NCBI GenBank assembly: GCA_002269645.1
Contig: NIVC01002933.1
Coordinates: 65,575-129,574, forward strand
From: Macrostomum lignano
Taxonomy: Eukaryota
DNA length: 64,000 nucleotides
Direction of reading: 5' to 3'
Shown here: in pieces, positions 1-51,209 of the stretch
Numbering within the stretch: the stretch's first letter is position 1
Layout of the letters: each line of letters starts with the position of its first letter
Notes under the pieces: generated by a model
What the model saw: the letters and a program-made list of their open reading frames with translations, nothing else
The model's database searches: none
What the model was told of the DNA's origin: nothing
Made by a program: the position numbers and the translations under genes

Positions 1-678
1 TGCCGCCTGTGCCACGCCTGCGTCACCGGCCTGCTGCACGAGGTGGAGAAGCGGCCCTGTCCCGGAAACACCGAGGCCTGCACACTCAGAGACCACCACT
101 CGGAGGAGGACGTCGGCGACGGCGACGGCGGCGGCGAGGTCGAGGTGAGCCAGGCTATCTGCTTTCCCGACATGGCGACGAGACGCGAGGTCGCCAAGCT
201 GCGAGTCCGCTGTCCGAACTGCGACGCCGGCTGCTCTGTCCAACTCGAATGGGCTCGCATGGACCAGCATGTGCAACAGAGCTGCGACTGGCACTCACTC
301 CGCTGTGAGCAGTGCAAAGAGCTCATCCTGAAGAAGGACATGCAGCGACACACCAGCAGCGAGTGTCGCCACAGGAAGGAGACCTGCGACCTGTGCTCTC
401 AGCTGGTCACACACAGCGAGATGGAGACCAGTCACAGGAATCTGCAGTCCGATGTGTGCTGTCCGAGATTCTCAGCTCGCTGTCCTCACTGCTCGGAGCG
501 GAGCACACCGATGGACAGGCGGGGATATGTTGCTCACCTGTCGGAGTGTCCCGAGAGACCGGTAGAGTGCAAGTACTCTCACCTGGGCTGCAGGGCGATG
601 GTGCGCAGGTCCGATGTGGAGAGGCACTACATGGACAGCGTGGACTCTCACCTTGAGCTCATGGACTCGAGGCTCTGA
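1..678 (+). pseudogene. TRAF-like copy 1 (RING/TRAF zinc-finger exon), 5' end outside window, in-frame TGA shortly before the exon donor
   Basis: Near-identical to the other copies. TGA at 676-678 replaces the AAG of KLKQAA. The homologous phase-1 donor follows at 707 (ACAG|GTAAAA). No coiled-coil exon is seen downstream. Confidence 0.8.
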
Positions 679-844
679 CAGGCCGTGATAGCTCAGCGGA
701 GTACAGGTAAAATAGAACTTTTTTATAATAAAAAATATTTTAGACTTTCATTACAACAGCCCCAAGGTGTGTCGCTGAGTTCAAGTGAGTCTTTGTTGCA
801 GAAGATGGGGCAGGCCGACTTCCCTAATGTTTTTTATACTGAGA

Positions 845-3180
845 TTTTATAATGCGGAAAAGTTTTTTAATCATTTGTCAGCGTCTGTGAGGACTGTAGC
901 GGCTTTCCAGAGTCTTGAACAATTTCAAAATTGCCCACGTGGCGCCAGGATCGAGTCACATGCCGAACAGCTAGTAATTCTTGTGAGCCTTCAAATTTTT
1001 ATGTTCTAGTGAGTTGTTAAACGCTTCTAAAAAGTAGAGAGGCATTACCATTTTTCAGCTACTCGAACAGCGGAACTCTGAGCCAGTGGATTCTGCTGCC
1101 TGAACTTGGTGACCGATTTGGCCAGCTTATCTAGTTACTTTGAGCCTTTCTGTCGTTAATACAATGATATTATTACTCGTGCTTCCTAATATTAAGCCTA
1201 TTACGAGCTGCGATGGTTGTAAAATCGCCAAATCAAGCGTTCGAATTTTTGCTGTTTCTGCATGCTGATTGATTTATGTCTCAGTTGTTGTGAAATTTAT
1301 CCAATATTCTTCGCTCTGAAAGCATCACCAAAAGTACACAGAATTCGGGTACAGGTCATCACAACACATGACTATAACGAGGAACGACTTGTTCGGTACT
1401 GCCTTGTAGCCTTCCTGTATTTCTTTACTAGAATGAAATGTTGACTCACCACTGCTAAAATTATAACTTTCCACAGTACTTAATGCAGTTCCGTTCTACA
1501 TGGAAAAGCTACAAGGTACTACAGCTGCACTTTATTAAAAGCCTATGCACTTTAAATAGTACGCACTAAAAGTTAAAACTTTTCGTCTGACAAGTTTCAT
1601 TGGTATCGAGGAAAACTTCTGCGATTTGGCTGGACTCGAGGACGATTCAATGGTTCATCAGTGTAACTAAAAACGGTTTGCTTCGAGCGCTTTTATGCAG
1701 TGTTGGGCAAGTTACTCAAAAAAAGTAACTTGCGTTACTGTAACTTAAGTTACCAATTTTTAAAAAGTAACTTACGTTAGCCTAGTAACTTTAGACAAAA
1801 ACCTGGTAACTTTTAAGTTACTGTCCGTTACTCACTTCCGTTACCCATGTTATTAACAAAATTTTCTGCTTTTTTCACATTGCACATTTTTTCACATTGT
1901 TGTTACCGAAATTTGCCATTGGGCATTGGGATTAACCGATTAACAGACAGAGACAGGAATTGACGACACGATGTGAGGCAAGTAGAAGGACCAATGGGCA
2001 ATGGCAATCAATAATTAAAATTATAAATGATAAATTAAACGAATATCAATAATTCAATAGAGTAAAATAAATAGAACTGTATAAAATGGTGTAGTGTATA
2101 CTGCAGTGCCAGTGGAGGGACTTGTGGAGGCTACAGATGAATTTCTTTCTTTGGTTGTTTGTTTGAATCAAACTTAAAAATTTTTAGTAACGAAAATGAA
2201 GGCGAAAATATTTTACCGAAATTAACAAAGTAAAACATGTTTCAAGTATTTCTTCATTAATTAAGCGCAATACCATATGATACTATTCACTTAATTTTGA
2301 ATTTAGGAATGAAAAATGCAAAAACATGTGACAACCGGCGTACTAGCTAAGCATTTCAGTTTTAAATTTAAATATTGCGATTGTTGCAAAGTACTCTGTA
2401 ACGGACTTCTGAAATTTGAGTAACTTACCGTTACTCCGTTACTAAAATAAAAAAGTAACTTGCGTAAGGAACGCTTTACGAAAAAGTAACTTGCGTTACC
2501 ATTTGCAAGTTACTCGGTAACGGAAGTGCCCAACACTGCTTTTATGATTAATTAAAATCGACATCGAAAATTCACTTCTACTCTCAGCTCCTCAACGGGC
2601 CGTTCCCGATAAAAACTGTACCAAGGCTAAGAAGCGTCCCAGAGTCACGCCCCAAAGTTGTTTCAGAGCCGTTGCAGGTAACACAGGTAAAATAGGAAAG
2701 AGGTGACTCTAAATGACTCTAAAACGGTGAGATGTCACTGTCAAACTTCGCCGAAAAGTCATCAAAGAGTCACTTAAGGCTCAATCTGATGTGTTTGATT
2801 GTCTGCGACCCTGAAATGCCTTTAGTGTGTGATGGAAGTGACTCTGTGGCGCTTTTATACTGACTCTGGGGCCGGCGCGTCTGCGTTACATTTTGCGTTT
2901 ATAAAAAAACTCTGTTTAGTCTACTTGAGTTAGTAATAAGTTACGTGAATACGACTCTTGGACAACTTTTGCGCGACTCATATGATTATACAACTCACTT
3001 GATGCGCTCGAGACTCAAGAGTCTCCTCTAAGCCGCATTGCAGTCGCTTGAGTCGTTACAAGAGTCGCTCCTGAGTTGCTCGAGTAATTTTTGCTACAAC
3101 TCCTGCTAAACGATAGCGATTCTTGTCCAAGACTTTGACGTTTTCAGCGTGTGTCCAATCGCCAATAAAACAAATCAAAA
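845..3180 (+). repeat. Segmental duplicate A (interrupted by the hAT MITE) of 3875-5215
   Basis: Collinear similarity, e.g. CAGAGTCTTGAA.AATTTCAA, GGATCGAGTCA, CCTGAACTTGGTGACCGAT.TGGC and GCAGGTAACACAGGTAAAATAG in both copies. Confidence 0.85.
1698..2538. mobile_element. Non-autonomous hAT-type DNA transposon (MITE)
   Basis: TIRs CAGTGTTGGGCA / TGCCCAACACTG. 8-bp TSD CTTTTATG at 1690-1697 and 2539-2546. Many subterminal GTAAC/GTTAC motifs. The paralogous region near 4770 has a single CTTTTATG (empty site). Confidence 0.92.
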
Positions 3181-3350
3181 AGACGGAACCTACTCTTGAA
3201 GCTATCCTCGGCTGAAGGTGGCAAGTTTCACGGATGCAGCAACTGCCACTGGGCGGTCTGACGACTCGGACTCACGAACTGGCTGCATGTTGAACAAAAT
3301 GCTGTTGTAACTGAAATTTGACTCACCTCCACTACATTCCCAGTTCCGAA

Positions 3351-6013: not shown

Positions 6014-7844
6014 TTACAAGCTTGAACCAACTCGCAACTTCAGGCAGAAAACGTTGCCCCGAGCATCTCCGACAAGCAGATGCAGCTGAGCATCGAATGA
6101 CAGCAGCTTCATCGTAGTAACTTCGCAGCTGTGCTTGAAGTGCGACACCTGCAAAAATTGCAGGGTTCGAAATATTCTGATAATAAAAAACACAATGCGA
6201 TAAAAGCTCATGAGGGAGATTTTAAGCCGCACCTCAGCGAGCTGGTTCAGTGCAGCTCCGGCCTGCATGCGCCAGACGCTGACTTCCCCACCGAGGCCGT
6301 GGCGAGGAACGGCAGGACGCCGCTCAGATCGTCCGTCAGCCGGCAGAGGGCTGTGATTGGCTGCGCGTGGCACTGCGATGGTCGGTGAGAACGGTGCGAT
6401 GAGATATTTCTTCTGAGGTCAGATTTTCAAGACGTTGAAATTCTCTGCAGCTGTTCAAAAGGCTTACCAGAAATCTGCTGACCACTGGGCAGAGCTGCAT
6501 GCTGGAGTCCATTCTGAGCACCGAGATCCGCCCGGGTATCCCACAAGGGAATATCAGGCAGGCTTCTCCGGGCAAGTCGCCGGCAGCGAATACCTGCAGC
6601 AAGGCCGCAGCTCCGTCCAGCAAGTCGAGTCGGTCAGAAGCTCGCCAGCCTCCAACAATGGCAGGACCCGCCAACGCGGTGCGCAGCGTCGCCAAGTAAA
6701 GCCTGGGGTTGCCGAGCTGCAAGCAGAGCATGTAGTCCGGCTCCACGATCCGCAGAAGCACCGGCGGCCCAGCCGTCGCATCCAGGTCGCCGGCACCACT
6801 TTGGTGCCGAAGGGCGACGAAACTGCCCTGAGCTGCCACCAAAGCCAAAGTGGAATCTTCAAAGCCTACGACTGCCGCATGATTCTCAGGGATGGGGCAG
6901 AGGGCTGTCACGGGCGAGTGGCTGTCCAGCAGCTCTGCGACTCCAGCATTCAGCATGTCACGCAGAAGCGACTCATGGCCTTGAAGTAGGAGCTGCCCAC
7001 AGCGGATTCTGACCAGGCCTCTCCGCTGCTGCCAGCTGAGCAACAGAAGACTACCCGTCGGCGAGTTCAGATGGGTCACGGCGCCCCAAAGCGATGGCGC
7101 CAGCATTCGATGCTGCAGACACATGGAGTCCAGGTGCCACAGCAGCACGGACCCGTCCGCGCCGCCAGTGGCAACAAAAGAAATGTTTCCAAGACGGCAG
7201 ACTGCGGCGACTCGACTGCTGTGACCTCGGCTGAAGCCCAGCTCAGCGGGTGGCAAGTTTGAAGGATGCAGCAACTGCACTGGGCGGTCAGACGACTCGG
7301 GGTCGCGAACGGGCTGCAAGTTGAAGGCGAAAAAGCTAACACAGTGTACTTGCTAAGCTAACACACTGCACTTGCTAAGCTAACAAACTACACTTGCTAA
7401 GCTAACACAGTGTACTTGCTAAGCTAACACAATGTACTGGCTAAGCTACGAACACAGTGTACTTGCAAGTCTTACAACATGCACTTGTTCGGCTCCACCA
7501 CAAGGAAGACGAAAATGTTGCGTCGCAATCGACCCGCCGGTTGCAATAAAATTCGCTGAAGGCGCTGCTGGATCCTGGACAGGCTCCTGCGGCGAATCAG
7601 TCAGCCTTTCGTCAAACAAAATTCTGCTGCTGTCCGTGGCGGAGTCACGCGCTGGTCGGCTCCCAGAGTTGCCTGAGAATCCGTGAAGTTGAATAGTTTG
7701 CTACTTTTCAGAAAATTGAAGCCAGAAACACACATGACATAAATTTGTATTTAAAAATGTTTCACTTACCAATAGCTCGCTGCAGCCGTTGAGAAGAGGC
7801 AATTTGGCGCTGAGGTGCGATCGAAGCGCCACGAGGTCTCTCGG
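6014..7844 (-). pseudogene. WD40-repeat gene A (5'-truncated, fused to TRAF copy 2, frameshifted)
   Basis: Exons about 7844-7770, 7700-7476, 7335-6468, 6372-6230 and a last exon ending at 6014. WD-type motifs GHSSRVAAV...VATGGADGSVLLW and CHAQPITAL...LATAS...VSVW; C-terminus LLVGDARGNVFCLKL. Exon structure is paralogous to gene B. Frameshift near 6290 relative to B. Confidence 0.75.
7333..7465. repeat. 22-bp intronic tandem repeat (same unit as 3351-3504)
   Basis: GCTAAGCTAACACAGTGTACTT units inside a WD40-A intron. Confidence 0.85.
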
Positions 7845-8502
7845 GACACTCCGACAGGTGAGCAACATATCCCCGCCTGTCCATCGGTGTGCTCCGCTCC
7901 GAGCAGTGAGGACAGCGAGCTGAGAATCTCGGACAGCACACATCGGACTGCAGATTCCTGTGACTGGTCTCCATCTCGCTGTGTGTGACCAGCTGAGAGC
8001 ACAGGTCGCAGGTCTCCTTCCTGTGGCGACACTCGCTGCTGGTGTGTCGCTGCATGTCCTTCTTCAGGATGAGCTCTTTGCACTGCTCACAGCGGAGTGA
8101 GTGCCAGTCGCAGCTATGTTGCACATGCTGGTCCATGCGAGCCCATTCGAGTTGGACAGAGCAGCCGGCGTCGCAGTTCGGACAGCGGACTCGCAGCTTG
8201 GCGACCTCGCGTCTCGTCGCCATGTCGGGAAAGCAGGTAGCCCGGCTCACCTCGACCTCGACCTCGCCGCTAGCGTCCTCCTCCGAGTGGTGATCTCTGA
8301 GTGTGCAGGCCTCGGTGTGTCCGGGACAGGGCCGCTTCTCCACCTCGTGCAGCAGGCCGGTGACGCAGGCCTGGCACAGGCGGCACCCGTGCAGAGTCTG
8401 TTGGGCGTTGAAGAGCGGCTTTGAGCAGCTGCTGCACTGCAGGTGAGCCGGCAGATCGGAGACCGGCCGTGCGGCCGTCACACTCGAAGGCAGCTCGGAC
8501 AT
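7845..8502 (-). pseudogene. TRAF-like copy 2, truncated after ...SECPERP and joined to a WD40-A exon
   Basis: ATG at 8502 (MSELP). Similarity to the other copies stops at GAGAGACC (about 7845), after which an unrelated exon ending in a GTAAGT donor follows. Confidence 0.85.
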
Positions 8503-10214: not shown

Positions 10215-10440
10215 CTTGTTAAAGGCTGCCTGCATGCATCTATTTATAGGCTTTATTCATTTTGGATGAAGTTCTACTTTTTATGTACGTCTAAAATTAA
10301 ATGTACTGCGGTGCTGTAAGTACACTATCAGCTACCGTGATAGAAATGTACACTTCCTTCGCTTTCTTAACTTTTGAACAGATATAAAAACACATTTATA
10401 TATCTGCTTAAAACATGATCAGATACGAGTACAATCTATG
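10215..10440. repeat. Orphan copy of the TRAF upstream flank (direct repeat of 8680-8900)
   Basis: Shared CCTTGTTAAAGGCTGCCTG, CGTCTAAAATTAAATGTACTGCGGTG and TATCTGCTTAAAACATGATCAG. Confidence 0.8.
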
Positions 10441-10789
10441 ACGTTTTTGCATACAGCTGGTAAATAGGTATGAAAGGCTCATTGTGTATTATTGAAATAT
10501 CACTAAAGAGTAATGTGAAAGATATTAGAAAAATAACGTTACTATCTTTTATGCTTCTACACTTCTGTAAACAGAACTTAAAAATTCATAGGTAATAGCT
10601 ACTTGTTTAGGTATTCTCAATCCCAGCTAAATATTCATGAATATCCGAGTGTTAAAGGGATAAAACTATGAAATTGACAATAGAAAAATTCTAACAAAAG
10701 CAGAATTTGTCATCTGTTGCCTGATAATTCTTTGCCTTCATTTTTTGTCTTTAATTTTGCCCAGACAAGAATTCAGTACTAGAATTCAT

Positions 10790-11833: not shown

Positions 11834-13054
11834 ATGTCCGAGCTGCCTTCGAGTGTCGTGGCTGCCCGGCCGGTCTCCGATCTGCCGGCTCACCTGCAGT
11901 GCAGCAGCTGCTCCAAGCCGCTCTTCAACGCCCGACAGACTCCGCACGGGTGCCGCCTGTGCCAGGCCTGCGTCACCGGCCTGCTGCACGAGGTGGAGAA
12001 GCGGCCCTGTCCCGGACACACCGAGGCCTGTACACTCAGAGACCACCACTCGGAGGAGGACGCTAGCGGCCAGGTCGAGGTCGAGGTGAGCCAGGCTACC
12101 TGCTTTCCCGACATGGCGACGAGACGCGAGGTCGCCAAGCTGCGAGTCCGCTGTCCGAACTGCGACGCCGGCTGCTCTGTCCAACTCGAATGGGCTCGCA
12201 TGGACCAGCATGTGCAACAGAGCTGCGACTGGCACTCACTCCGCTGTGAGCAGTGCAAAGAGCTCATCCTGAAGAAGGACATGCAGCGACACACCAGCAG
12301 CGAGTGTCGCCACAGGAAGGAGACCTGTGACCTGTGCTCTCAGCTGGTCACACACAGCGAAATGGAGACCAGTCACAGGAATCTGCAGTCCGATGTGTGC
12401 TGTCCGAGATTCTCAGCTCGCTGTCCTCACTGCTCGGAGCGGAGCACGCCGATGGACAGGCGGGGATATGTTGCTCACCTGTCGGAGTGTCCCGAGAGAC
12501 CGGTAGAGTGCAAGTACTCTCACCTGGGCTGCAGGGCGATGGTGCGCAGGTCCGATCTGGAGAGGCACTACAGAGAAAGCATGGACTCTCACCTTGAGCT
12601 CATGGACTCGAAACTGAAGCAGGCAGCGATAGCTCAGCAGAGTCCTGGTGAGATTTGCTTTCCAAATCAGTAAATTGGTTAACCAGAAAAAGCTGCTACG
12701 AGCGTATTTTCGGATATTAAAAAAAAATTTATACTTTTAGTATCTGCGGTCCCGCAGTCTTCTGTCGGTGCCGGAGCTCTTGCCGCCACAGCCACCGATG
12801 GACGCGATGTGGTCGACGTGAAGCGGCGAGTCGGCAGCGTCTTCGAGCAGTTCAAGAAGCTGCAGGTCAACGTGGCGAACTGGGCTCACAGCACCATGGA
12901 GCTCGAGCAGCTGGCTGACAGGTTCGGAGGCGTCTCGCAGCTGCGGACTCTGCTGAGCGGACTGGACGAGCGGACGAGGAGCGTCGAGCAGCTGCAGCAG
13001 CAGGTGCAGGAGCTCCAGCAGCAGGTGCAGCAGCTGCAGCGACATCGAGCCTGA
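11834..13054 (+). CDS. TRAF-like copy 3, intact: RING + TRAF zinc fingers + coiled coil, no MATH domain
   Basis: Exon 11834-12647 (donor GTGAG, phase 1) and exon 12741-13054 (TTTTAG acceptor) join in frame. CSSC...HGCRLCQAC...CP RING, CPNC...H...C and CEQC...H...C fingers, QQQVQQL heptads, ends HRA-stop. Confidence 0.9.
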
Positions 13055-20245: not shown

Positions 20246-22718
20246 TCAAAATGCAGTCTGATGAAATGCGTTCGCAGCAAGCCAAGGAAGCTCCAGAGAG
20301 AAGGCGTTCCCGCCAGCATCCCCGACAAGCAGCAGAGGCCGGTCGGTGGCTGTGAGGTGCAGCCCCAGGGTGGTCACCTCGTGGCCGTGCTCGAAGTGAG
20401 CAACCTGAGTGGCAGGGGCGGGTTAGAAATTGGCGAGAAGTTTGATTAGAAGCGAAACGAAAAATGACTGCACGATGCCTGACCTCAGCCAGCTGATTGA
20501 CCCCGCTCTGCATGCGCCAAACGCTGACTTTCCCTTGAGCAGAGGCCGTGGCCAGGAGCGGCAGGGCGCCCGTGAGGTCGCTCGTCAGCAGGCTGATGGC
20601 TCGTATCGGCCGGGTGTGGCACTGCGGAAAGGGAGACAAATCGCAGGGAGATCGGGGTGAGTTCGGTGTGAGATCAGGGTGAAACCGGGGTGAGATCGGG
20701 GTGAGATCGAGGTGAGATCGGTGTGAGATCGGGATGAAATCGGGGTGAGATCGGGGTGAGATCGTGATGAGATCGGGGTGAGATCGGGGTGAGATCGGGG
20801 TGAGATCGGGGTGAGATCGGGATGAGATCGGGGTGAGATCGGGGTGAGTTCGGTGTGAGATCAGGGTGAAACCGGGGTGAGATCGGGGTGAGATCGAGGT
20901 GAGATCAGTGTGAGATCGGGATGAAATCGGGGTGAGATCGTGATGAAATCGGGATGAGATCGGGGTGAGATCGGGGTGAGATCGGGGTGAGATCGGGGTG
21001 AGATCGGGGTGAGATCGGGGTGAGATCGGGGTGAGATCAGGGTGAGATCGGTGTGAGATCGGGGTGAGATCAAGGTGAAACCGGGGTGAGATCGGGGTGA
21101 GATCGGGGTGAGATCGGGGTGAGATCGGGATGAGATCGGGGTGAGACCGGGGTGAGATCGGGGTGAGATCGGGGTGAGATCGGGGTGAGACCGGGGTGAG
21201 ATCGGGGTGAGACCGGGGTGAGATCGGGGTGAGATCGGGTGAAACCGGGGTGAGATCGGGGTGAAACCGGGGTGAGATCGGGGTGAGATCGAGGTGAGAT
21301 CGGTGTGAGATCGGGATGAAATCGGGGTGAGATCGGGGTGAGATCGTGATGAGATCGGGGTGAGATCGGGGTGAGATCGGTGTGAGATAGGATGAGATCG
21401 AGGTGAGATCGTGGTGAGATCGGGGTGAGATCTGGGTGAGATCGGGGTGAGATCTTGTGGAGGTTCTGGGTGAATTTGGTGAGAAATGGAAAACATCCTC
21501 AGTTTCAGAATTGAACTTCAGCCTGCAGCAACTTGAAACAATAATTTTAGGTTAGAAATTCAGACATCAGATATTAAAAAGAAACGATTCACCATAAAAC
21601 CCGTCAAGACGGGATGAATTTTGGCATCGGAGCCGAGTTTAACGATGGAGATCCGATTGCGACTTTGACACCGAAACGCCACAATGGCAACTCCGGGACC
21701 GCAGCCTGCAGCGCACGCCTGAATCACTGGAGAAGCATCCGCCGCCATCTCGTCGAAGCACTGGAAGGTTCGCCAGCCGCTGACAGCCATCCTGCCGTCC
21801 TGAGCCGTGTGCAGCTGAGCGGAGCGGAGCACAGGGCTACTGAGCTGGCGGGCCAGCAGCCACCCGGGCTCCAGAATCCGCAAAAACATCGGCGGGCCAG
21901 CCAGAGGGTCGAAACCGGTGAGCCCAACCAGCGGCTGAAGACCTCCTTCGGCTGGCACCAGTGCGAGGCTTCTATCGGTGAGAGCGACAATGGCCTGAGC
22001 AGATTCGGGAACTGCGCACATGACCGCCACAGGTGAGTTGCTTTGAAGCAGCTCCGCCTCTCCAGTGCTCAAAAGGTGCTCCAGCTCAGCATCAGTGTCG
22101 CACAGATACCCCTCCGGGCACCGGAGTCGCACGAGTCCATTCAGATTCTCCCAGCCGGCCAACAGAATGTCAGATGCCGGAGACACCAGACAGATGATTG
22201 GACCCCAACTCGCAGGGGCCCGGACTCGACTCTGGAGACGCATTGAGTCGAGGTGCCACAGCACCGCGATTCCGTCCGCGCCTCCCGAAACAAAAATCTG
22301 ATGCCCGTCTAGAGAGCAGGCAGACGTGACTCGGCCAGCATGACCCCGACTGAAAACCAGCTCGGACAGCAGCTGATTAGGCCCGCTCAGTATTCGGACA
22401 GGCGAGTCGGCAGCAATGGGGTTGCAAATTGGCTAAAAATGTGGAATGAGTTTAGTGACAGGACTTTCGACTAAGTGAATAAAGGTGCGAATGAATATAC
22501 GCAAAGTCGCTCACATTCTGCAACTGCAGAGCTCCACCCAACGAATACGGCCTGTGAAGGAACGATGAAGAGCTCATCGGCGATTCTAGCGGATCTTGGC
22601 CGGGGTCTCGGGGCACCGAGGTCAGTTGTGCGTCGTGTCGGCTTCGGTCGCCAACAGGAACGTCCATGGCCTGCCGTCGGCCACTGAAAACAGCTGACCA
22701 GTGATGAAGAGCAAACTG
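20246..22718 (-). CDS. WD40-repeat module B, four open phase-0 exons, no start exon other than TRAF copy 4
   Basis: Exons 22718-22515, 22432-21593, 20621-20484 and 20404-20246 all have AG/GT ends and join without stops. Motifs GHAGRVTSA...FVSGGADGIAVLW, CHTRPIRAI...LATASAQGKVSVW and LLVGDAGGNAFSL. Confidence 0.82.
20648..21455. repeat. 11-bp intronic minisatellite GAGATCGGGGT
   Basis: Read directly. It lies in the intron between WD40-B exons 2 and 3. Confidence 0.95.
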
Positions 22719-22793
22719 CTAGCATGCTGAGTAGCAGTACATAAAATTTGTCTCAATAATAGAATCCATTGACCCTACACCATACTGACATAC

Positions 22794-23604
22794 CAGAATT
22801 CGAATGAGCTATCGCTGCTTTGAGTTTCGAGTCCATGAGCTCAAGGTGAGAGTCCATGCTTTCCCTGTAGTGCCTCTCCAGATCGGACCTGCGCACCATC
22901 GCCCTGCAGCCCAGGTGAGAGTACTTGCACTCTACCGGTCTCTCGGGACACTCCGACAGGTGAGCAACATATCCCCGCCTGTCCATCGGTGTGCTCCGCT
23001 CCGAGCAGTGAGGACAGCGAGCTGAGAATCTCGGACAGCACACATCGGACTGCAGATTCCTGTGACTGGTCTCCATCTCGCTGTGTGTGACCAGCTGAGA
23101 GCACAGGTCGCAGGTCTCCTTCCTGTGGCGACACTCGCTGCTGGTGTGTCGCTGCATGTCCTTCTTCAGGATGAGCTCTTTGCACTGCTCACAGCGGAGT
23201 GAGTGCCAGTCGCAGCTCTGTTGCACATGCTGGTCCATGCGAGCCCATTCGAGTTGGACAGAGCAGCCGGCGTCGCAGTTCGGACAGCGGACTCGCAGCT
23301 TGGCGACCTCGCGTCTCGTCGCCATGTCGGGAAAGCAGGTAGCCCAGCTCACCTCGACCTCGCCGCCGCCGCCGCCGTCCTCCTCCGAGTGGTGGTCTCT
23401 GAGTGTGCAGGCCTCGGTGTGTCCGGGACAGGGCCGCTTCTCCACCTCGTGCAGCAGGCCGGTGACGCAGGCCTGGCACAGGCGGCACCCATGCGGAGTC
23501 TGTCGGGCGTTGAAGAGCGGCTTGGAGCAGCTGCTGCACTGCAGGTGAGCCGACAGATCGGAGACCGGCCGGGCGGCCGACACAGTCGAGGGCAGCTCGG
23601 ACAT
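22794..23604 (-). CDS. TRAF-like copy 4 first exon (RING + zinc fingers), directly upstream of WD40 module B
   Basis: ATG at 23604. Open to the phase-1 donor CTG|GTATGT at 22794/22793. No coiled-coil exon follows. Confidence 0.88.
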
Positions 23605-27149: not shown

Positions 27150-28395
27150 ATGTCAGAACTTCCACAGCGAGTGTCGGGAGCCCGGCCGGTCTCCGATCTG
27201 CCGGCTCACCTGCAGTGCAGCAGCTGCTCCAAGCCGCTCTTCAACGCCCGACAGACTCCGCACGGGTGCCGCCTGTGCCAGGCCTGCGTCACCGGCCTGC
27301 TGCACGAGGTGGAGAAGCGGCCCTGTCCCGGACACACCGAGGCCTGCACACTCAGAGACCACCACTCGGAGGAGGACGTCGGCGGCGGCGGCGAGGTCGA
27401 GGTCGAGGTGAGCCGGGCTACCTGCTTTCCCGACATGGCGACGAGACGCGAGGTCGCCAAGCTGCGAGTCCGCTGTCCGAACTGCGACGCCGGCTGCTCT
27501 GTCCAACTCGAATGGGCTCGCATGGACCAGCATGTGCAACAGAGCTGCGACTGGCACTCACTCCGCTGTGAGCAGTGCAAAGAGCTCATCCTGAAGAAGG
27601 ACATGCAGCGACACACCAGCAGCGAGTGTCGCCACAGGAAGGAGACCTGCGACCTGTGCTCTCAGCTGGTCACACACAGCGAGATGGAGACCAGTCACAG
27701 GAATCTGCAGTCCGATGTGTGCTGTCCGAGATTCTCAGCTCGCTGTCCTCACTGCTCGGAGCGGAGCACACCGATGGACAGGCGGGGATATGTTGCTCAC
27801 CTGTCGGAGTGTCCCGAGAGACCGGTAGAGTGCAAGTACTCTCACCTGGGCTGCAGGGCGATGGTGCGCAGGTCCGATCTGGAGAGGCACTACAGGGAAA
27901 GCATGGACTCTCACCTTGAGCTCATGGACTCAAAACTCAAGCAGGCAGCTGCTGTTCCGTCGAATTCTGGTAAGCTTTTCTGTTGATTAATAGCAAAGAT
28001 CAATGTGCGCCAATACATTAAGGTGGTTGGATGCGAATGTTTTGTAGGCCGCTATTGCAATAATGTTTAATTGTTCATTTCCAGCAGCTGCGGTCCCGCA
28101 GTCCTCCGCCGGTGCCGCACCTCCCGCCCCCACAGCTGCCGACGGTCGCGAGGTGGCCGACGTGAAGCGGCGAGTCGGCAGCGTCTTCGAGCAGTTCAAG
28201 AAGCTGCAGGTCAACGTGGCGAACTGGGCTCACAGCACCATGGAGCTCGAGCAGATGGCTGACAGGTTCGGAGGCGTCTCGCAGCTGCGGACTCTGCTGA
28301 GCGGCATGGACGAGCGGACGAGGAGCGTCGAGCAGCTCCAGCAGCAGGTGCAGCAGCTCCAGCAGCAGGTGCAGCAGCTGCAACAGCGGGCTTGA
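27150..28395 (+). CDS. TRAF-like copy 5, intact RING/ZnF + coiled coil
   Basis: Exons 27150-27969 (G|GTAAG) and 28085-28395 (TTTCCAG|CA) join in frame; ends QRA-stop. Confidence 0.9.
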
Positions 28396-29112: not shown

Positions 29113-29139
29113 TCTGTCTGAAGTCTCTTCACTGCATTC

Positions 29140-34139: not shown

Positions 34140-35350
34140 ATGTCGGAGCTGCCTTCGAGTGTGTCGGCTGCGAGGCCGGTCTCCGCTCTGCCGGCTCACC
34201 TGCAGTGCAGCAGCTGCTCCAAGCCGCTCTTCAACGCCCGACAGACTCCGCACGGGTGCCGCCTGTGCCAGGCCTGCGTCACCGGCCTGCTGCACGAGGT
34301 GGAGAAGCGGCCCTGTCCCGGACACACCGAGGCCTGCAAAGACCACCACTCGGAGGAGGACGTCGGCGGCGATGTCGAGGTCGAGGTGAGCCGGGCTACC
34401 TGCTTTCCCGACATGGCGACGAGACGCGAGGTCGCCAAGCTGCGAGTCCGCTGTCCGAACTGCGACGCCGGCTGCTCTGTCCAACTCGAATGGGCTCGCA
34501 TGGACCAGCATGTGCAACAGAGCTGCGACTGGCACTCACTCCGCTGTGAGCAGTGCAAAGAGCTCATCCTGAAGAAGGACATGCAGCGACACACCAGCAG
34601 CGAGTGTCGCCACAGGAAGGAGACCTGCGACCTGTGCTCTCAGCTGGTCACACACAGCGAGATGGAGACCAGTCACAGGAATCTGCAGTCCGATGTGTGC
34701 TGTCCGAGATTCTCAGCTCGCTGTCCTCACTGCTCGGAGCGGAGCACACCAATGGACAAACGGGGATATGTTGCTCACCTGTCGGAGTGTCCCGAGAGAC
34801 CGGTAGAGTGCAAGTACTCTCACCTGGGCTGCAGGGCGATGGTGCGGAGGTCCGATCTGGAGAGGCACTACAGGGAAAGCGTGGACTCTCACCTTGAGCT
34901 CATGGACTCGAAACTCAAGCAGGCAGCGATAGCTCAGCAGAGTCCTTGTAAGAACTGATGTCAAAATCAGTAATATAATCACGCAGAAGATGCTGTTCTG
35001 TGGTTTAATTTTTTTTCCTATTTTTAGCAGCCGCCGTGCCGCAGTCTTATGTAGGTTCCGCAGCTCCCGCCGCCGACGGTCGCGATGTGGCCGACGTGAA
35101 GCGGCGAGTCGGCAGCGTCTTCGAGCAGTTTAAGAAGCTGCAGGTCAACGTGGCGAACTGGGCTCACAGCACCATGGAGCTCGAGCAGCTGGCTGACAGG
35201 TTCGGAGGCGTCTCGCAGCTGCGGACTCTGCTGAGCGGACTGGACGAGCGGACGAGGAGCGTCGAGCAGCTGCAGCAGCAGGTGCAGCAACTCCAGCAGC
35301 AGGTGCAGCAACTCCAGCAGCAGGTTCAGCAGGCGCAGAGCAGTCAATAG
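34140..35350 (+). CDS. TRAF-like copy 6, intact RING/ZnF + coiled coil
   Basis: Exons 34140-34947 (T|GTAAG) and 35028-35350 (TTTTTAG|CA) join in frame. Confidence 0.9.
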
Positions 35351-40949: not shown

Positions 40950-42213
40950 ATGTCCGAGCTGCCTTCAAGTGTGTCGGCAGCGAGGCCGGTCTCTGATCTG
41001 CCGGCTCACCTGCAGTGCAGCAGCTGCTCCAAGCCGCTCTTCAACGCCCGACAGACTCCGCACGGGTGTCGCCTGTGCCAGGCCTGCGTCACCGGCCTGC
41101 TGCACGAGGTGGAGAAGCGGCCCTGTCCCGGACACACCGAGACCTGCACACTCAGAGACCACCACTCGGAGGAGGACGGCGGCGGCGGCGGCAGCAGCGG
41201 CGAGGTCGAGATCGAGGTGAGCCGGGCTACCTGCTTTCCCGACATGGCGACAAGACGCGAGGTCGCCAAGCTGCGAGTCCGCTGTCCGAACTGCGACGCC
41301 GGCTGCTCTGTCCAACTCGAATGGGCTCGCATGGACCAGCATGTGCAACAGAGCTGCGACTGGCACTCACTCCGCTGTGAGCAGTGCAAAGAGCTCATCC
41401 TGAAGAAGGACATGCAGCGACACACCAGCAGCGAGTGTCGCCACAGGAAGGAGACCTGCGACCTGTGCTCTCAGCTAGTCACACACAGCGAGATGAAGAC
41501 CAGTCACAGGAATCTGCAGTCCAATGTGTGCTGTCCATTGTTCTTAGCCTACTGCCCTCACTGTAGCTACAGAAGCAGGAAGATGGACAGGCGGGGATAT
41601 GTTGCTCACCTGTCGGAGTGTCCCGAGAGACCGGTAGAGTGCAAGTACTCTCACCTGGGCTGCAGGGCGATGGTGCGCAGGTCCGATCTGGAGAGGCACT
41701 ACAGGGAGAGCATGGACTCTCACCTTGAGCTCATGGACTCGAAACTGAAGCAGGCAGCGATGGCTCAGCAGAGGCCTCGTAAGACAAATTTTAATCAGTG
41801 AAATAATCATGCAGGCGAAGCTGCCAGCATCAGATGCTTTCATTCTTGATAAAAAAATTTTCTCTTTTACAGCAGCTGCGGTCCCGCCGTCCTCCGCCAG
41901 TGCCGCAGCGTCCACCGATGCTCATGAAGTCGTCAACGTGAAGCGGCGAGTCGGCAGCGTCTTCGAGCAGTTCAAGAAGCTGCAGGTCAACGTGGCGAAC
42001 TGGGCTCACAGCACTATGGAGCTCGAGCAGCTCGCTGACAGGTTCGGAGGCGTCTCGCAGCTGCGGACTCTGCTGAGCGGACTGGACGAGCGGACGAGGA
42101 GCGTCGAGCAGCTGCAGCAACAGGTGCAGCAGCTCCAGCAGCAGGTGCAGCAGCTCCAGCAGCAGGTGCAGCAGCTCCAGCAGCAGGTGCAACAGCTGCA
42201 GGAAAGGATTTGA
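40950..42213 (+). CDS. TRAF-like copy 7, intact, with divergent zinc-finger patch and four heptad repeats
   Basis: Exons 40950-41778 (C|GTAAG) and 41873-42213 (TTTTACAG|CA) join in frame. Confidence 0.9.
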
Positions 42214-46413: not shown

Positions 46414-47767
46414 ATGGCCTTTGAGCTGCCCCAGCGAGTTTCGGGAGCCCAGGCGGTCTCCGCTGTACCGGCCCATCTGCAGTGCAGCAGCTGCTCCAAG
46501 CCGCTCTTCAACGCCCGACAGACTCCGCACGGGTGCCGCCTGTGCCAGGCCTGCGTCACCGGCCTGCTGCACGAGGTGGAGAAGCGGCCCTGTCCTGGAA
46601 ACACCGAGGCCTGCACACTCAGAGACCACCACTCGGAGGAGGACGCTGGCGGCGAGGTCGAGGTCGAGGTGAGCCAGGCTACCTGCTTTCCCGACATGGC
46701 GACGAGACGCGAGGTCGCCAAGCTTCGAGTCCGCTGTCCGAACTGCGACGCCGGCTGCTCTGTCCAACTCGAATGGGCTCGCATGGACCAGCATGTGCAA
46801 CAGAGCTGCGACTGGCACTCACTCCGCTGTGAGCAGTGCAAAGAGCTCATCCTGAAGAAGGACATGCAGCGACACACCAGCAGCGAGTGTCGCCACAGGA
46901 AGGAGACCTGCGACCTGTGCTCTCAGCTGGTCACACACAGCGAGATGGAGACCAGTCACAGGAATCTGCAGTCCGATGTGTGCTGTCCGAGATTCTCAGC
47001 TCGCTGTCCTCACTGCTCGGAGCGGAGCACACCGATGGACAGGCGGGGATATGTTGCTCACCTGTCGGAGTGTCCCGAGAGACCGGTAGAGTGCAAGTAC
47101 TCTCACCTGGGCTGCAGGACGATGGTGCGCAGGTCCGATCTGGAGAGGCACTACAGGGAGAGCATGGACTCTCACCTTGAGCTCATGGACTCGAAACTCA
47201 AGCAGGCAGCGATAGCTCAAAATAGCCATAGTAAGTTTTAAGCTGCTAGTTGAAGTAGTTTGACAGTTTTTTGTTGCTATTTTCGAAATTACTAGTAAAT
47301 AACAAAAAGTGTTGTGTTACAAAGCTGCGCTTAATGAATCATAATTTTATCACTACCAGAGTAGCAGATACAATAGCTGCTTTTCTAGCTGCGATCAGCA
47401 GAACCAATTAGTAACTCGAAAGCCCCATACAAGTTCGTTGCCAACCTCCTCTTCCACAGCCGCAGTCGCGCAGCCGACTGTCCGGCCCGCTGACATCCCC
47501 GAAGCGGCCGCCATGAACCGGCAGGTCGGCAACATCTACGGCAAGTTCAAGGCGCTGCAGAAAGGCGTTTCCGACTGGGCTCACAGTACCGTCATGTTTG
47601 AGAAGTTGGTTGAGTCTTTAGGAGGCATCACACAGTTGCAAACCCTGCTCAGATTGTTCGATGAGCGCACAAGGCAGTTTGAACAGCTGCAGCAGCAGGT
47701 GCAGCAGCTTCAGCACCAAGTGCAACAGCTGCAGGCCGCGCAGCCTTCAAATTCGTATCGGGCCTGA
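46414..47767 (+). CDS. TRAF-like copy 8, standard exon 1 with a divergent coiled-coil exon 2
   Basis: Exons 46414-47230 (A|GTAAG) and 47460-47767 (TTCCACAG|CC) join in frame; ends YRA-stop. Confidence 0.85.
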
Positions 47768-47918
47768 CCTGCGCTCAGACACGGCTTGGAGCGCTTTTGG
47801 ACTCTACAGAATCACTGATTTGAGATTTGAGAGTCTTCTTTGCATCTCAAACTTTGCATAAGTACAAGTATATTTGAAAATTCAATAAAGTTATATCCAG
47901 ATTGAAATCTAATTTTAA

Positions 47919-48178
47919 ACATCAGCACACCTCACAGGTACATCAGCACACCTCACAGGTACATCAGCACACCTCACAGGTACATCAGCACACCTCACAG
48001 GTACATCAGCACACCTCACAGGTACATCAGCACACCTCACAGGTACATCAGCACACCTCACAGGTACATCAGCACACCTCACAGGTACATCAGCACACCT
48101 CACAGGTACATCAGCACACCTCACAGGTACATCAGCACACCTCACAGGTACATCAGCACACCTCACAGGTACATCAGC
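47919..48178. repeat. 21-bp tandem repeat ACATCAGCACACCTCACAGGT
   Basis: About 12 perfect units. Confidence 0.95.
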
Positions 48179-48746
48179 AGGAGTCCCAAAGGCCCTTAAA
48201 AGACTCCCAAATCAAAGCCATAACTTGGTTAAAGCACAAAAATGAAACAATATATTTAAAGCATCAAATTTCAAATACATTAATGTTTACGTAAAAAATC
48301 GGTTATATCGAGCATTATTTATTACGGTGTAATCCATGATTTACATATGGATTAAATGTTAAACTCAATCGTATTAAATTGCAAGCTAGTCGTCAAATAA
48401 AAAAATTCAAATTGCCAAAAATTTATCAATTAATGCTGCAAAACACTGAAAAAACTTAATCAGAATAGGCTTCAAATGCCAGCGAAACGCATGGAGAAGG
48501 TAGAAAGTTTTTGACAATACCGGTATTAGGCAAAAATCGCTTTAAGAATGCGCCACAAGTTATCAGAAAGAGAAAACTGAAGCTCGAGACAAATTTTGCA
48601 CCTCCTAACGCTAATGCGCATGCCAGAATAACAAAAATATTAAGTTCTGAAAGATACTTTTATTGAGAATACTTTTTCAGATTTTCTATTCTCTAGCATC
48701 AAGTCTCTTGGCCTCAGTACTTCAAAAGAAGCAGGCTGTCAGTGGC

Positions 48747-49991
48747 TCATGCCCTTGGTTGTTGCAGCTGCTGCACCTGCTGCTGGAGCTGCTGCACCTG
48801 CTGCTGGAGCTGCTCGACGCTCCTTGTCCGCTCGTCCAGTCCGCTCAGCAGAGTCCGCAGCTGCGAGACGCCTCCGAACCTGTCAGCCAGCTGCTCGAGC
48901 TCCATGGTGCTGTGAGCCCAGTTCGCCACGTTGACCTGCAGCTTCTTGAACTGCTCGAAGACGCTGCCGACTCGCCTCTTCACATCGGCCACCTCGCGAC
49001 CGTCGGCGGCTGTGGGGGCGGGAGGTGCGGCACCGGCGGAAGACTGCGGGACCGCGGCTGCTGGAAATGAACAATGAAATATTATTGCAATAGCGACCAA
49101 CAAAACATTCGCATTCAACCACCTTAATGTATTAGCGCACATTGATCTTTGCTATAATTCAACAGAAAAGCTTACCAGAATTCGACGGAAGAGCAGCTGC
49201 CTGCTTGAGCTTCGAGTCCATGAGCTCAAGGTGAGAGTCCATGCTGTCCTTGTAGTGCCTCTCCAGATCGGACCTGCGCACCATCGCCCTGCAGCCCAGG
49301 TGAGAGTACTTGCACTCTACCGGTCTCTCGGGACACTCCGACAGGTGAGCAACATATCCCCGCCTGTCCATCGGTGTGCTCCGCTCCGAGCAGTGAGGAC
49401 AGCGAGCTGAGAATCTCGGACAGCACACATCGGACTGCAGATTCCTGTGACTGGTCTCCATCTCGCTGTGTGTGACCAGCTGAGAGCACAGGTCGCAGGT
49501 CTCCTTCCTGTGGCGACACTCGCTGCTGGTGTGTCGCTGCATGTCCTTCTTCAGAATGAGCTCTTTACACTGCTCACAGCGGAGTGAGTGCCAGTCGCAG
49601 CTCTGTTGCACATGCTGGTCCATGCGAGCCCATTCGAGTTGGACAGAGCAGCCGGCGTCGCAGTTCGGACAGCGGACTCGCAGCTTGGCGACCTCGCGTC
49701 TCGTCGCCATGTCGGGAAAGCAGGTAGCCCGGCTCACCTCGATCTCGACCTCGCCGCCCCCGTCCTCCTCCGAGTGGTGGTCTCTGAGTGTGCAGGTCTC
49801 GGTGTGTCCGGGACAGGGCCGCTTCTCCACCTCGTGCAGCAGGCCGGTGATGCAGGCCTGGCACAGGCGGCACCCGTGCGGAGTCTGTCGGGCGTTGAAG
49901 AGCGGCTTGGAGCAGCTGCTGCACTGCAGGTGAGCCGGCAGATCGGAGACCGGCCGGGCTGCCGACACACTCGAAGCAGCTCGTAGGCCAT
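48747..49991 (-). pseudogene. TRAF-like copy 9, both exons present but with a 1-nt deletion five codons after the ATG
   Basis: ATG GCC TAC GAG CTG C-T TCG AGT versus CTG CCT TCG AGT in other copies. Exons 49991-49176 and 49060-48747. Intron nearly identical to copy 5. Confidence 0.75.
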
Positions 49992-51198: not shown

Positions 51199-51209
51199 CC
51201 TGACTCCTA

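What the first reader, a model, noticed from the sequence alone, without database searches (positions are those of the whole stretch)
1..49991. Nine-copy TRAF exon acting as a constant cassette with swappable C-terminal modules and no MATH domain
Seen: the exon of about 810-830 nt is near-identical in nine places (orientation +,-,+,-,+,+,+,+,-). What follows it differs: standard coiled coil (copies 3,5,6,7,9), divergent coiled coil (8), WD40 modules (2,4), or a stop (1). All coiled-coil forms end in a stop, mostly ...RA*, so no TRAF-C domain is encoded. Neighbouring paralog pairs (WD40 A/B, the two lectin-like genes) are far more diverged than the TRAF exons. Established: the MATH domain binds receptor tails. 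Inference: a diversifying family of receptor-independent ubiquitin ligases or decoys, kept homogeneous by gene conversion or spread recently as a cassette.
Basis: partly seen in the sequence, partly recalled or inferred. Interest (0 to 1): 0.85.

Follow-up and report, generated by a model that had tools for sequence, protein, structure and literature searches.

The report
TRAF-like gene cluster homogenised by gene conversion
A flatworm (Macrostomum lignano) gene cluster holds nine TRAF-like genes without the receptor-binding domain. Gene conversion keeps their first exon almost identical while the rest of each gene has drifted apart; this is a clear but not unprecedented case of concerted evolution.

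Summary
Nine copies of an 808-829-nt exon (+,-,+,-,+,+,+,+,-) encode a RING-like motif plus TRAF-type zinc fingers. Five continue into a near-identical coiled-coil exon, one into a diverged one, two into WD40-like exons, and one ends at a stop. No MATH domain appears in any ORF of 60 aa or more.

The window is Macrostomum lignano. It is collinear with two other contigs of assembly GCA_002269645.1, probably the known subgenomes, so the array is not an assembly artefact.

Copies are 97-100% identical in the exon cores but unalignable just upstream of the ATG, in the 100-140-nt intron, and after the stop.
- Exon-1 dS among paralogs is about 0.04. The diverged exon 2 of copy 8 has dS 0.75-0.94, and the two WD40-like tails share 41% of residues.
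- Informative sites are mosaic (recombination test p = 0.0015).
- Copy 9 has position-9 flanks but a copy-5-type intron, which marks a discrete conversion tract.

The best explanation is an old cluster under domain-limited interlocus gene conversion, not a recently spread cassette. Function (E3 ligase or decoy) is untested, and dN/dS of 0.4-0.5 gives no sign of diversifying selection. Domain-limited conversion is known (TLR1/TLR6), as are flatworm TRAF expansions. Interest is moderate to low.

The parts
1..706 (+). c1: 3' 706 nt of a TRAF-like exon 1, cut by the window start. In-frame TGA at 676-678, donor GT at 707, no exon 2 downstream. Probable pseudogene or truncated form.
   Evidence: dN/dS of 1 or more against several copies.
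6035..8502 (-). c2 gene. Exon 1 is 8502-7770; family homology stops at 7835 after ...SECPERP, followed by 22 novel codons and a GTAAGT donor. Putative linker exon 7672-7476. WD40-like exons 7313-~6420, ~6387-6274 and ~6289-6035.
11834..13054 (+). c3 gene. Exon 1 is 11834-12647 (RING-like motif plus five TRAF-type zinc fingers). Intron follows. Exon 2 is ~12777-13054 (coiled coil, ends RHRA*).
20249..23604 (-). c4 gene. Exon 1 is 23604-22794. Linker exon 2 is ~22700-22520 (AVFSGRRQ...LQLQN, donor GTGAGT). WD40-like exon 3 is 22432-21644. The next intron holds an 11-nt tandem array. Exon 4 is 20621-~20478 and exon 5 is 20407-20249 or beyond.
   Evidence: Junctions match UniProt model P0006 and protein P0007.
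27150..28395 (+). c5 gene. Exon 1 is 27150-27969 and exon 2 is ~28085-28395 (ends QQRA*). Donor type for the conversion tract found in c9.
34140..35350 (+). c6 gene. Exon 1 is 34140-34947 and exon 2 is ~35028-35350 (ends AQSSQ*).
40950..42213 (+). c7 gene. Exon 1 is 40950-41778, with a copy-specific 45-nt patch of 23 substitutions. Exon 2 is ~41873-42213, with extra QQQVQQLQ repeats (ends QERI*).
46414..47767 (+). c8 gene. Exon 1 is 46414-47230 (homogenised). Exon 2 is ~47460-47767 and is a diverged coiled coil (71% nt identity, dS 0.75-0.94 against the standard; ends SYRA*).
48747..49989 (-). c9 gene. Exon 1 is 49989-49176, with a 1-nt deletion after the ATG and no in-frame ATG. Exon 2 is ~49060-48747 (ends QPRA*). 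The stretch 49220-48981 is copy-5 type, while the flanks are orthologous to copy 9 of the sister contig. This marks a gene-conversion tract.

Best explanation
The window is a lineage-specific cluster of TRAF-like genes in the flatworm Macrostomum lignano.

What the genes encode. Each gene has a RING-like motif, five TRAF-type zinc fingers and, in most copies, a short coiled coil. None has the receptor-binding TRAF-C/MATH domain.

Age of the duplicates. The duplicates are old. Introns, promoters, 3' flanks and the 5-15 kb of DNA between copies are unrelated. Two copies carry WD40-like tails only 41% identical to each other, and one copy has a coiled-coil exon with dS of about 0.8-0.9.

Mechanism (shown). 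Interlocus gene conversion, acting between direct and inverted copies up to at least 20 kb apart, keeps two coding blocks nearly identical. These are the ~730-nt RING/zinc-finger core of exon 1 in all nine copies and the ~230-nt coiled-coil core of exon 2 in five.

Why conversion stops at the exon edges (inferred). Heteroduplex extension ends where homology ends. The exon edges therefore erode gradually, and the short intron acts as a barrier that is crossed only occasionally, as in the c5-to-c9 event.

A further consequence (suggested, not proven). The shared exon also serves as a substrate for non-allelic homologous recombination that can re-assort C-terminal exons. One subgenome copy appears to show this.

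Function (inferred only). The products probably oligomerise through the coiled coil or zinc fingers and act as scaffolds or modulators of TRAF-type signalling that cannot dock on receptor tails. Whether they are active E3 ligases is open.
For: Identity of the genes:
- The closest proteins are M. lignano TRAF-type proteins at 93-95% identity.
- Pfam zf-TRAF scores 2.6e-11.
- TRAF6 RING-ZF structures match at 3.7e-10, and the alignment covers the RING.
- No MATH domain was found in any of 353 ORFs or in the public protein models.

The array is real:
- Window 25.7-54.5 kb is collinear with contigs NIVC01000672.1 and NIVC01001049.1, with the same copy order and orientation.
- M. lignano is known to carry three subgenomes that differ by about 2% SNPs (PMC10733133).

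Conversion:
- Identity is 97-100% in the exon cores. It falls to 35-45% just upstream of the ATG, in the intron and after the stop. The first and last 60 nt of exon 1 are intermediate at 62-92%.
- Exon-1 dS among paralogs is 0.038, similar to the intergenic divergence between subgenome copies (2.6-4.3%). In the same gene, c8 exon 2 has dS 0.75-0.94.
- The c2 and c4 tails are 41% identical as protein, while their exon 1 copies differ at 13 sites.
- 139 of 300 informative site pairs fail the four-gamete test. The PHI-type permutation test gives p = 0.0015 for seven window copies and p = 0.0005 for 17 copies.
- Intron types are position-specific and shared between subgenomes, yet c9 carries the c5-type intron between c9-type flanks.
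- In the core tree only copy 7 of the window groups with its positional counterparts.
- GC3 is higher in converted exons (0.77-0.91) than in their non-converted partners (0.64-0.72).
Against: - Divergence among paralog cores is about equal to divergence between subgenome copies. Much of the pattern could therefore reflect one homogenisation shortly before the subgenomes split, plus a few later events, rather than continuous conversion.
- The core tree is star-like with few informative sites.
- Short-read polishing of a genome in which 93% of read pairs multi-map (PMC10733133) could have erased or mixed true paralog differences. That would exaggerate both homogeneity and mosaicism.
- The same paper classes 36% of Mlig_3_7 scaffolds as chimeric between subgenomes. 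The rearranged copy in contig C, and in principle the c9 tract, could be assembly errors.
- It is unusual that a 100-140-nt intron has stayed unconverted between two converted blocks.
- No expression or splicing data were available.
- The public gene models at the sister locus are chimeric across paralogs.
- c1 and c9 may be pseudogenes.
Confidence: 0.78

Rival explanations
1. Recent cassette spread or exon shuffling. A single ~0.8-kb exon, or a 1.2-kb two-exon unit, was recently copied to nine places in front of different 3' exons, for instance by a transposon or by template switching. The copies are alike because they are young.
For: Homology starts within a few bases of the ATG and ends at the donor or just after the stop. 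The intergenic DNA is unrelated. Core divergence is about as low as subgenome divergence.
Against: - Each copy has its own 5' 60 nt, 3' 25 nt, intron and flanks, and these are conserved between the three subgenome copies.
- Identity decays gradually rather than at a sharp junction.
- No terminal repeats or target duplications appear at the boundaries.
- All copies keep the same donor position and phase.
- Variants are mosaic.
- c2, c3 and c4 share a further 250 nt upstream, so the unit has no fixed ends.
Confidence: 0.1
2. Old paralogs kept alike by purifying selection alone, acting on the protein and perhaps on codon usage or mRNA features, with no sequence exchange.
For: The conserved blocks coincide with the folded domains, and the linkers vary. 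dN/dS is below 1.
Against: - Synonymous divergence in exon 1 is 0.04. It is 0.75-0.94 in c8's exon 2 and about 0.45 against the outgroup species.
- Selection cannot place a c5-type intron inside c9.
- Selection cannot produce the four-gamete violations clustered by distance.
Confidence: 0.04
3. Assembly, polishing or haplotype artefact. The number of copies or their near-identity is produced by mis-assembly of a repeat-rich polyploid genome.
For: M. lignano assemblies are known to be error-prone, with 36% of scaffolds chimeric and most reads multi-mapping (PMC10733133). c9 has a 1-nt deletion in a CC run, typical of long-read indel errors. The rearranged copy in contig C could be a mis-join.
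Against: - Three separately assembled collinear contigs show the same order, orientation and unique spacers, including an ASC channel gene between c7 and c8.
- The copies sit in unique, non-repeated DNA.
- Polishing can only blur copies that are already about 95% alike.
Confidence: 0.08

Closest known systems
Canonical TRAFs (closest by sequence: TRAF6, then TRAF5 and TRAF2, N-terminal RING-zinc-finger region)
   Same: RING-like motif followed by five TRAF-type zinc fingers and a coiled coil. The alignment to TRAF6 RING-ZF structures (5vo0, 8hz2, 3hcs) scores E of about 1e-10.
   Different: No TRAF-C/MATH domain. RING ligands 3 and 4 are swapped (PHGC instead of PCGH). Ser replaces TRAF6 Ile72 at the position that, from my own knowledge of the TRAF6/Ubc13 structures, contacts the E2. 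An acidic, Gly-rich linker of variable length is inserted after the RING.
TRAF7 (RING, TRAF zinc finger, coiled coil, seven WD40 repeats; architecture from established knowledge)
   Same: c2 and c4 replace the MATH domain by a WD40-type C-terminal region. The predicted c4 product is about 690 aa, close to TRAF7 in size.
   Different: Only one WD40 repeat is recognisable. The rest has no relatives among 1.84 billion representative proteins except one M. lignano protein. Exon 1 belongs to the local conversion pool rather than to a conserved single-copy gene. This is most likely an independent, analogous fusion.
Domain-limited gene conversion between innate-immunity paralogs, e.g. mammalian TLR1/TLR6 (PMC2077338)
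   Same: Conversion keeps one functional region of tandem paralogs nearly identical while other domains diverge.
   Different: Here there are nine or more copies rather than two, in both orientations. There are two separate conversion blocks split by an unconverted intron. Wholly different C-terminal domains are attached.
TRAF/MATH expansion in planarians (Schmidtea mediterranea, PMC6109357)
   Same: A flatworm lineage-specific expansion of TRAF-related genes.
   Different: The planarian expansion is counted by MATH domains (about 100-120). The Macrostomum family described here lacks MATH altogether.

Membership tests
TRAF family (canonical, TRAF1-6) | C-terminal TRAF-C / MATH domain | tested here: not met
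   Pfam scan of all 353 stop-to-stop ORFs of 60 aa or more in the window gave no MATH hit at E up to about 0.005. Exon 2 ends in a stop in c3 and c5-c9. Public M. lignano models carry only PF02176. MATH exons shorter than 60 aa or outside the window are not excluded.
TRAF family (canonical, TRAF1-6) | TRAF-type zinc fingers | tested here: met
   PF02176 at 2.6e-11, above the gathering score, in all nine copies. Five C-x2-C...H...C units are visible in the translation.
TRAF family (canonical, TRAF1-6) | N-terminal RING finger | tested here: inconclusive
   No Pfam RING hit. Residues 17-64 do align to TRAF6 RING structures (8hz2 5.5e-10 over RING plus zinc fingers; 2eci and 2jmd at 0.05-0.06). 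All eight ligand positions hold Cys or His, with ligands 3 and 4 swapped.
TRAF family (canonical, TRAF1-6) | Coiled coil (TRAF-N) after the zinc fingers | tested here: inconclusive
   Exon 2 gives only weak, generic coiled-coil Pfam hits (ATG16, Laminin_II, Prefoldin, Mis12) and contains QQQVQQLQ repeats. No dedicated coiled-coil predictor was run.
TRAF7-type (RING, zf-TRAF, WD40) | Seven WD40 repeats forming the C-terminal domain | tested here: inconclusive
   One repeat was detected (Pfam 1.7e-5, 25.6 bits against a cut-off of 27). Profile hits in the 1.84-billion-protein library and in the PDB all fall on positions ~25-70 only. The AlphaFold2 model was unusable (pLDDT 30.8).
TRAF7-type (RING, zf-TRAF, WD40) | Orthology to metazoan TRAF7 | not tested
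   No TRAF7 sequence was available for direct comparison. No hit covered more than the single WD40 repeat at positions ~25-70.
Concerted evolution by interlocus gene conversion | Paralog identity, including synonymous sites, far above that of adjoining non-converted sequence | tested here: met
   Exon-1 dS is 0.038, against dS 0.75-0.94 in c8 exon 2. Introns and flanks are 35-45% identical.
Concerted evolution by interlocus gene conversion | Mosaic variants and phylogenetic incompatibility with distance dependence | tested here: met
   139 of 300 site pairs fail the four-gamete test. PHI-type permutation p = 0.0015 and 0.0005.
Concerted evolution by interlocus gene conversion | A discrete tract of donor type between orthologous flanks | tested here: met
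   c9 at 49220-48981 is 90-97% identical to c5/B5 and 22-72% to B9. Its flanks at 50240-50121 and 48800-48501 are 83-100% identical to B9.
Concerted evolution by interlocus gene conversion | Paralogs within a genome copy closer than positional orthologues | tested here: inconclusive
   W5-B5 differ at 21 sites but W5-W4 at 8. W9-B9 differ at 17 but W9-B10 at 8. However, W7/B7/C7, B8/C8 and B11/C10 do group by position, and the tree is star-like.
Transposable-element-borne cassette | Sharp boundaries with terminal repeats or target-site duplications | tested here: not met
   The boundaries are graded and differ between copies, and no terminal repeats flank the units.

The most novel reading that the evidence does not exclude
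The homogenised exon 1 is more than a passive product of conversion. It may act as a portable block of homology that lets non-allelic recombination re-assort C-terminal exons (standard coiled coil, diverged coiled coil, WD40-like) among members of the cluster. That would make it a built-in way of generating new adaptor architectures in a signalling family. The subgenome copy in which c8's exon 1 is joined to c9's inverted intron and exon 2 would be one such event caught in the act. The WD40-like forms would be an independent re-invention of the TRAF7 architecture.
Probability: 0.15. Interest if true: 0.55.

Novelty: new member of a known kind. Interest (0 to 1): 0.3.

Why it matters
- It gives a clean, well-delimited example of domain-limited concerted evolution in a regeneration model organism. 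There are nine or more copies in both orientations, two conversion blocks separated by an unconverted intron, and three subgenome copies that serve as internal time markers.
- It has a practical consequence. Public gene models at the sister locus are chimeric across paralogs, so expression and RNAi studies of these genes in M. lignano need paralog-specific exon ends.
- It adds a MATH-less TRAF-like family, including TRAF7-like fusions, to the picture of TRAF diversification in flatworms.
- It does not open a new mechanism. Gene conversion in tandem families and TRAF expansions are both well known.

Tried and rejected
- Homologue search with the c2 WD40-like ORF found nothing among 5.8 billion proteins.
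- The profile search in 1.84 billion representatives found one real relative (P0007, M. lignano). All other hits were generic and fell on a single WD40 repeat. The PDB profile search gave the same picture.
- AlphaFold2 on the two-sequence WD40-like alignment gave pLDDT 30.8 and was discarded, so no fold search was run.
- Looking up P0007's contig, to obtain the sister locus of c1-c4, found nothing on record. Positional counterparts are therefore available only for c5-c9.
- A search with the outgroup protein P0004 found no further relatives. A classical within-species versus between-species test was not possible.
- A literature search for TRAF-type proteins in Macrostomum found nothing.
- The 'lectin-like' label could not be verified.
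- PHROGs and lenient Pfam scans of the AT-rich end of the window found only an endonuclease VII domain.
- Purifying selection alone, a mobile cassette and assembly artefact were considered as full explanations and ranked low, for the reasons given under the rival explanations.

Full report
**1. The observation**

A repeat search and a self-BLAST find nine copies of one ~0.8-kb sequence, in the orientation +,-,+,-,+,+,+,+,-. The positions are:
- c1 1-706, cut by the window start
- c2 8502-7770
- c3 11834-12647
- c4 23604-22794
- c5 27150-27969
- c6 34140-34947
- c7 40950-41778
- c8 46414-47230
- c9 49989-49176

Each copy is an open reading frame of about 270 codons. The full exons are 808-829 nt long. 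All end in phase 1 at a GT donor at the same position. In the 730-nt core the copies differ at 8-26 sites, or 33-49 sites for c7.

**2. What the exon encodes and whose genome this is**

Pfam finds the TRAF-type zinc finger (PF02176, 2.6e-11) and nothing else significant. A sequence search of the PDB gives the TRAF6 RING-zinc-finger fragments as best hits (5vo0 3.7e-10, 8hz2 5.5e-10), then TRAF5 and TRAF2. The 8hz2 alignment runs through the RING.

The RING-like motif reads C-x2-C-x11-H-x-C-x2-C-x2-C-x12-C-x2-H. All eight ligand positions hold Cys or His. Ligands 3 and 4 are swapped relative to TRAF6 (PHGC for PCGH). Ser occupies the position of TRAF6 Ile72. From my own knowledge of the TRAF6/Ubc13 and TRAF2 RING structures, that is an E2-contact position, so E3 activity cannot be assumed.

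The closest proteins in 5.8 billion are TRAF-type domain proteins of Macrostomum lignano at 93-95% identity. There is also one 63%-identical ORF from a Logan assembly (SRR24204725), which I used as an outgroup.

**3. What follows the exon**

c3, c5, c6, c7 and c9 have an intron of about 80-130 nt. It is followed by a second exon encoding VKRRVGSVFEQFKKLQVNVANWAHSTMELEQLADRFGGVSQLRTLLSGLDERTRSVEQLQQQVQQLQ..., a variable number of QQQVQQLQ units, and a stop.

c8 has a homologous but diverged second exon, with 60-66 differences in 207 nt.

c4 continues through several exons:
- a 60-codon linker exon;
- a 263-codon exon that begins with one clear WD40 repeat;
- an intron holding an 11-nt tandem array;
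- two further exons.

The c4 junctions match a UniProt model (P0006) and a 278-aa M. lignano protein (P0007).

c2 has the same downstream architecture, and an open splice chain exists. Its exon 1 loses family homology after ...SECPERP, which removes the fifth zinc finger. It then ends with 22 unrelated codons and a GTAAGT donor.

c1 has a TGA 10 codons before the donor and nothing recognisable downstream. c9 has lost the in-frame ATG through a 1-nt deletion in a CC run. This may be a long-read error.

**4. No MATH domain**

I translated every stop-to-stop ORF of 60 aa or more in all six frames (353 ORFs) and scanned each against Pfam. zf-TRAF appears in nine ORFs. MATH appears in none. The precomputed Pfam annotation of the public M. 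lignano models also lists only PF02176. Short MATH exons, or exons outside the window, are not excluded.

**5. The 'WD40 modules'**

The c2 and c4 tails are paralogous at 41% amino-acid identity over 251 residues. Only the first ~40 residues score as a WD40 repeat (1.7e-5, just under Pfam's cut-off).

- A word-indexed search found no homologue.
- A full HMMER profile search of 1.84 billion representatives found one true relative, P0007. Its other 1,573 hits touch only profile positions ~25-70.
- The PDB gave the same picture.
- An AlphaFold2 model was useless (pLDDT 30.8).

The domain is therefore WD40-like at its start and otherwise lineage-specific. In architecture c2 and c4 resemble TRAF7, but nothing indicates orthology.

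**6. The array is real**

Two public M. lignano proteins led to contig NIVC01000672.1 of assembly GCA_002269645.1, and a third led to NIVC01001049.1. Window 25.7-54.5 kb is collinear with both. The TRAF copies have the same order and orientation, and the spacers are the same unique sequences, including an intronless ASC-type channel gene between c7 and c8.

Substitution divergence in the spacers is 2.6-4.3%. The Mlig_3_7 assembly is reported to consist of three subgenomes (S, L1, L2) that differ by about 2% SNPs (PMC10733133). The three contigs are most simply those three copies.

The sister contig B has two further copies beyond c9 (B10 and B11). The window begins inside c1. The cluster therefore has at least eleven positions per subgenome.

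The NCBI gene models at the sister locus join exons of different paralogs across 9-14 kb, or read exon 1 out of frame. They are not evidence for long-range splicing.

**7. The pattern of similarity**

Aligned to c3, the other copies show the following identity:
- 35-55% in the 300 nt upstream of the ATG, except c2 and c4, which share about 250 nt of upstream sequence with c3;
- 63-92% in the first 60 coding nt;
- 97-100% through the core, apart from a variable Gly/acidic linker and the c7 patch;
- 62-89% in the last 60 nt of the exon;
- 29-46% in the intron;
- 92-100% in the exon-2 core;
- 31-56% just after the stop.

The DNA between the genes is not repeated. These are not young tandem duplicates.

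**8. Selection or exchange?**

Nei-Gojobori dS among the window's exon-1 cores averages 0.038 without c7, and dN/dS is about 0.4. Against the outgroup, dS is about 0.45 and dN/dS about 0.5.

In the same gene, c8's exon 2 has dS 0.75-0.94 against the standard exon 2. Standard exon 2 copies differ at only 0-8 of 207 sites. A twenty-fold difference in synonymous divergence between two exons of one gene cannot be explained by protein-level selection.

- The informative sites are mosaic.
- 139 of 300 site pairs fail the four-gamete test.
- Incompatibility rises with distance more than in permutations: p = 0.0015 for seven window copies and p = 0.0005 for 17 copies from three contigs.

**9. A conversion tract seen directly**

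The intron and the exon ends are position-specific and conserved between subgenomes: W5/B5, W6/B6, W7/B7/C7 and B11/C10. c9 is the exception.
- Its upstream flank (50240-50121) is 83-100% identical to B9, and its downstream flank (48800-48501) is 92-100% identical to B9.
- The stretch 49220-48981 covers the exon-1 tail, the intron and the exon-2 head. It is 90-97% identical to c5/B5 and only 22-72% to B9.
- The last codons of its exon 2 (QQPRA) are again of the position-9 type.

This is a conversion from c5 into the inverted c9, 20 kb away. It occurred after the subgenomes separated. The tract is at least 240 nt and at most about 1.2 kb.

In a neighbour-joining tree of the core, only copy 7 of the window groups with its positional counterparts. 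W5, W6, W8 and W9 do not. The tree is star-like, so this is weak support on its own.

GC3 is 0.77-0.79 in exon 1 and 0.91 in the standard exon 2. It is 0.72 in c8's exon 2 and 0.64-0.67 in the WD40-like exons. Introns and flanks have 36-42% GC. This fits GC-biased conversion but does not prove it.

**10. Module swapping**

In contig C the copy at position 8 has B8's upstream region and exon 1 (99.8% identical). This is joined to B9's intron and exon 2 in inverted orientation. The 5' 270 nt of B9's exon 1 and B9's upstream flank follow immediately.

An inversion by recombination between the inverted exon 1 copies of c8 and c9, followed by a deletion, would produce exactly this structure. It would exchange c8's diverged coiled coil for the standard one. 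Because 36% of Mlig_3_7 scaffolds are classed as chimeric, I treat this as suggestive only.

**11. Interpretation**

The best-supported account is an old, lineage-specific cluster of MATH-less TRAF-like genes under domain-limited interlocus gene conversion.
- There are two conversion blocks, the RING/zinc-finger core and the coiled-coil core.
- Conversion stops where homology has been lost. That explains the graded exon edges and the persistence of distinct introns.
- c8's exon 2 and the WD40-like tails have escaped the conversion pool.

- The proteins cannot dock on receptor tails through a TRAF-C domain.
- They probably oligomerise.
- Their RING may or may not recruit an E2.
- dN/dS of 0.4-0.5 and variation confined to linkers give no sign of diversifying selection.

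**12. Comparison with what is known**

- Domain-limited conversion that holds one functional region constant while others diverge is documented, for example for TLR1/TLR6 (PMC2077338).
- TRAF/MATH expansions are known in planarians (PMC6109357).
- TRAF7 is the known case of WD40 replacing MATH.
- No paper on TRAF-type proteins in Macrostomum was found.

The finding is a new member of known kinds. It is a tidy example with practical consequences for annotation, not a new mechanism.

**13. Caveats**

- There are no expression data.
- Assembly and polishing quality in this polyploid genome is limited.
- Positional counterparts are available only for c5-c9.
- The outgroup is a single contig.
- The recombination test is my own implementation of a PHI-type statistic.

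Noticed in passing
window 57000-64000, ORF 59080-62223 (+): The last ~6 kb drops to 28-32% GC. It carries an intronless 1047-aa ORF with an endonuclease VII domain (Pfam 3.3e-7, PHROG 3.2e-6) and GC3 of 0.20, against 0.65-0.9 in the host genes. Collinearity with the sister contig C stops at 54529. It looks like inserted mobile or foreign DNA of unidentified type.
   Followed up: partly
window 55575-56585 (-): ORF with a piggyBac-type transposase domain (DDE_Tnp_1_7, 4.4e-38), truncated at its N-terminus relative to the profile. It lies between the end of collinearity and the AT-rich segment.
   Followed up: no
window 15617-17300, 20506-21500, 51049-52000: Long microsatellite-like arrays with periods of 11, 11 and 7/14/21 nt. 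The second lies inside the c4 intron between WD40-like exons 3 and 4. These arrays create long spurious ORFs.
   Followed up: no
window 17976-18374 (+), continuing to ~18953: ORF with an ALK/LTK glycine-rich domain (PF12810, 3.3e-9), lying between c3 and c4.
   Followed up: no
window 42749-44443 (-): Intronless 564-aa amiloride-sensitive sodium channel (ASC/DEG-ENaC) gene between c7 and c8. It is conserved at 94-95% in both sister contigs.
   Followed up: partly
window ~41530-41590 (exon-1 nt 573-617 of c7): Twenty-three substitutions within 45 nt change CCPRFSARCPHCSERSTPMD to CCPLFLAYCPHCSYRSRKMD in zinc finger 4. The patch is shared by c7 in all three subgenome contigs. It may be an old conversion from an unseen, more diverged paralog.
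   Followed up: partly
L001/L002 (NIVC01000672.1) and L003 (NIVC01001049.1): NCBI gene models BOX15_Mlig029665g1, Mlig005209g2 and Mlig006760g2 are chimeric. They join exons of different TRAF paralogs across 9-14 kb, or translate exon 1 out of frame. This probably results from mapping transcripts onto near-identical exons.
   Followed up: yes
L003 reverse-complemented ('C'), 9226-10690: The position-8 copy has c8-type exon 1 fused to an inverted c9-type intron and exon 2, followed by the 5' 270 nt of c9's exon 1. This is either an inversion through the inverted exon 1 copies plus a deletion, or an assembly chimera.
   Followed up: partly
window 38618-39014 and 39605-40000: A 397-nt inverted repeat, 95.7% complementary, 590 nt apart. 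It may be the terminal repeats of a ~1.4-kb DNA transposon.
   Followed up: no
window 8503-8719 and 11619-11833 (also 23605-23861): c2 and c3 are head-to-head and share ~215 nt of upstream sequence at 95-98% identity. c4 shares it at 62-81%. This is the only case where homology extends into a putative promoter.
   Followed up: partly
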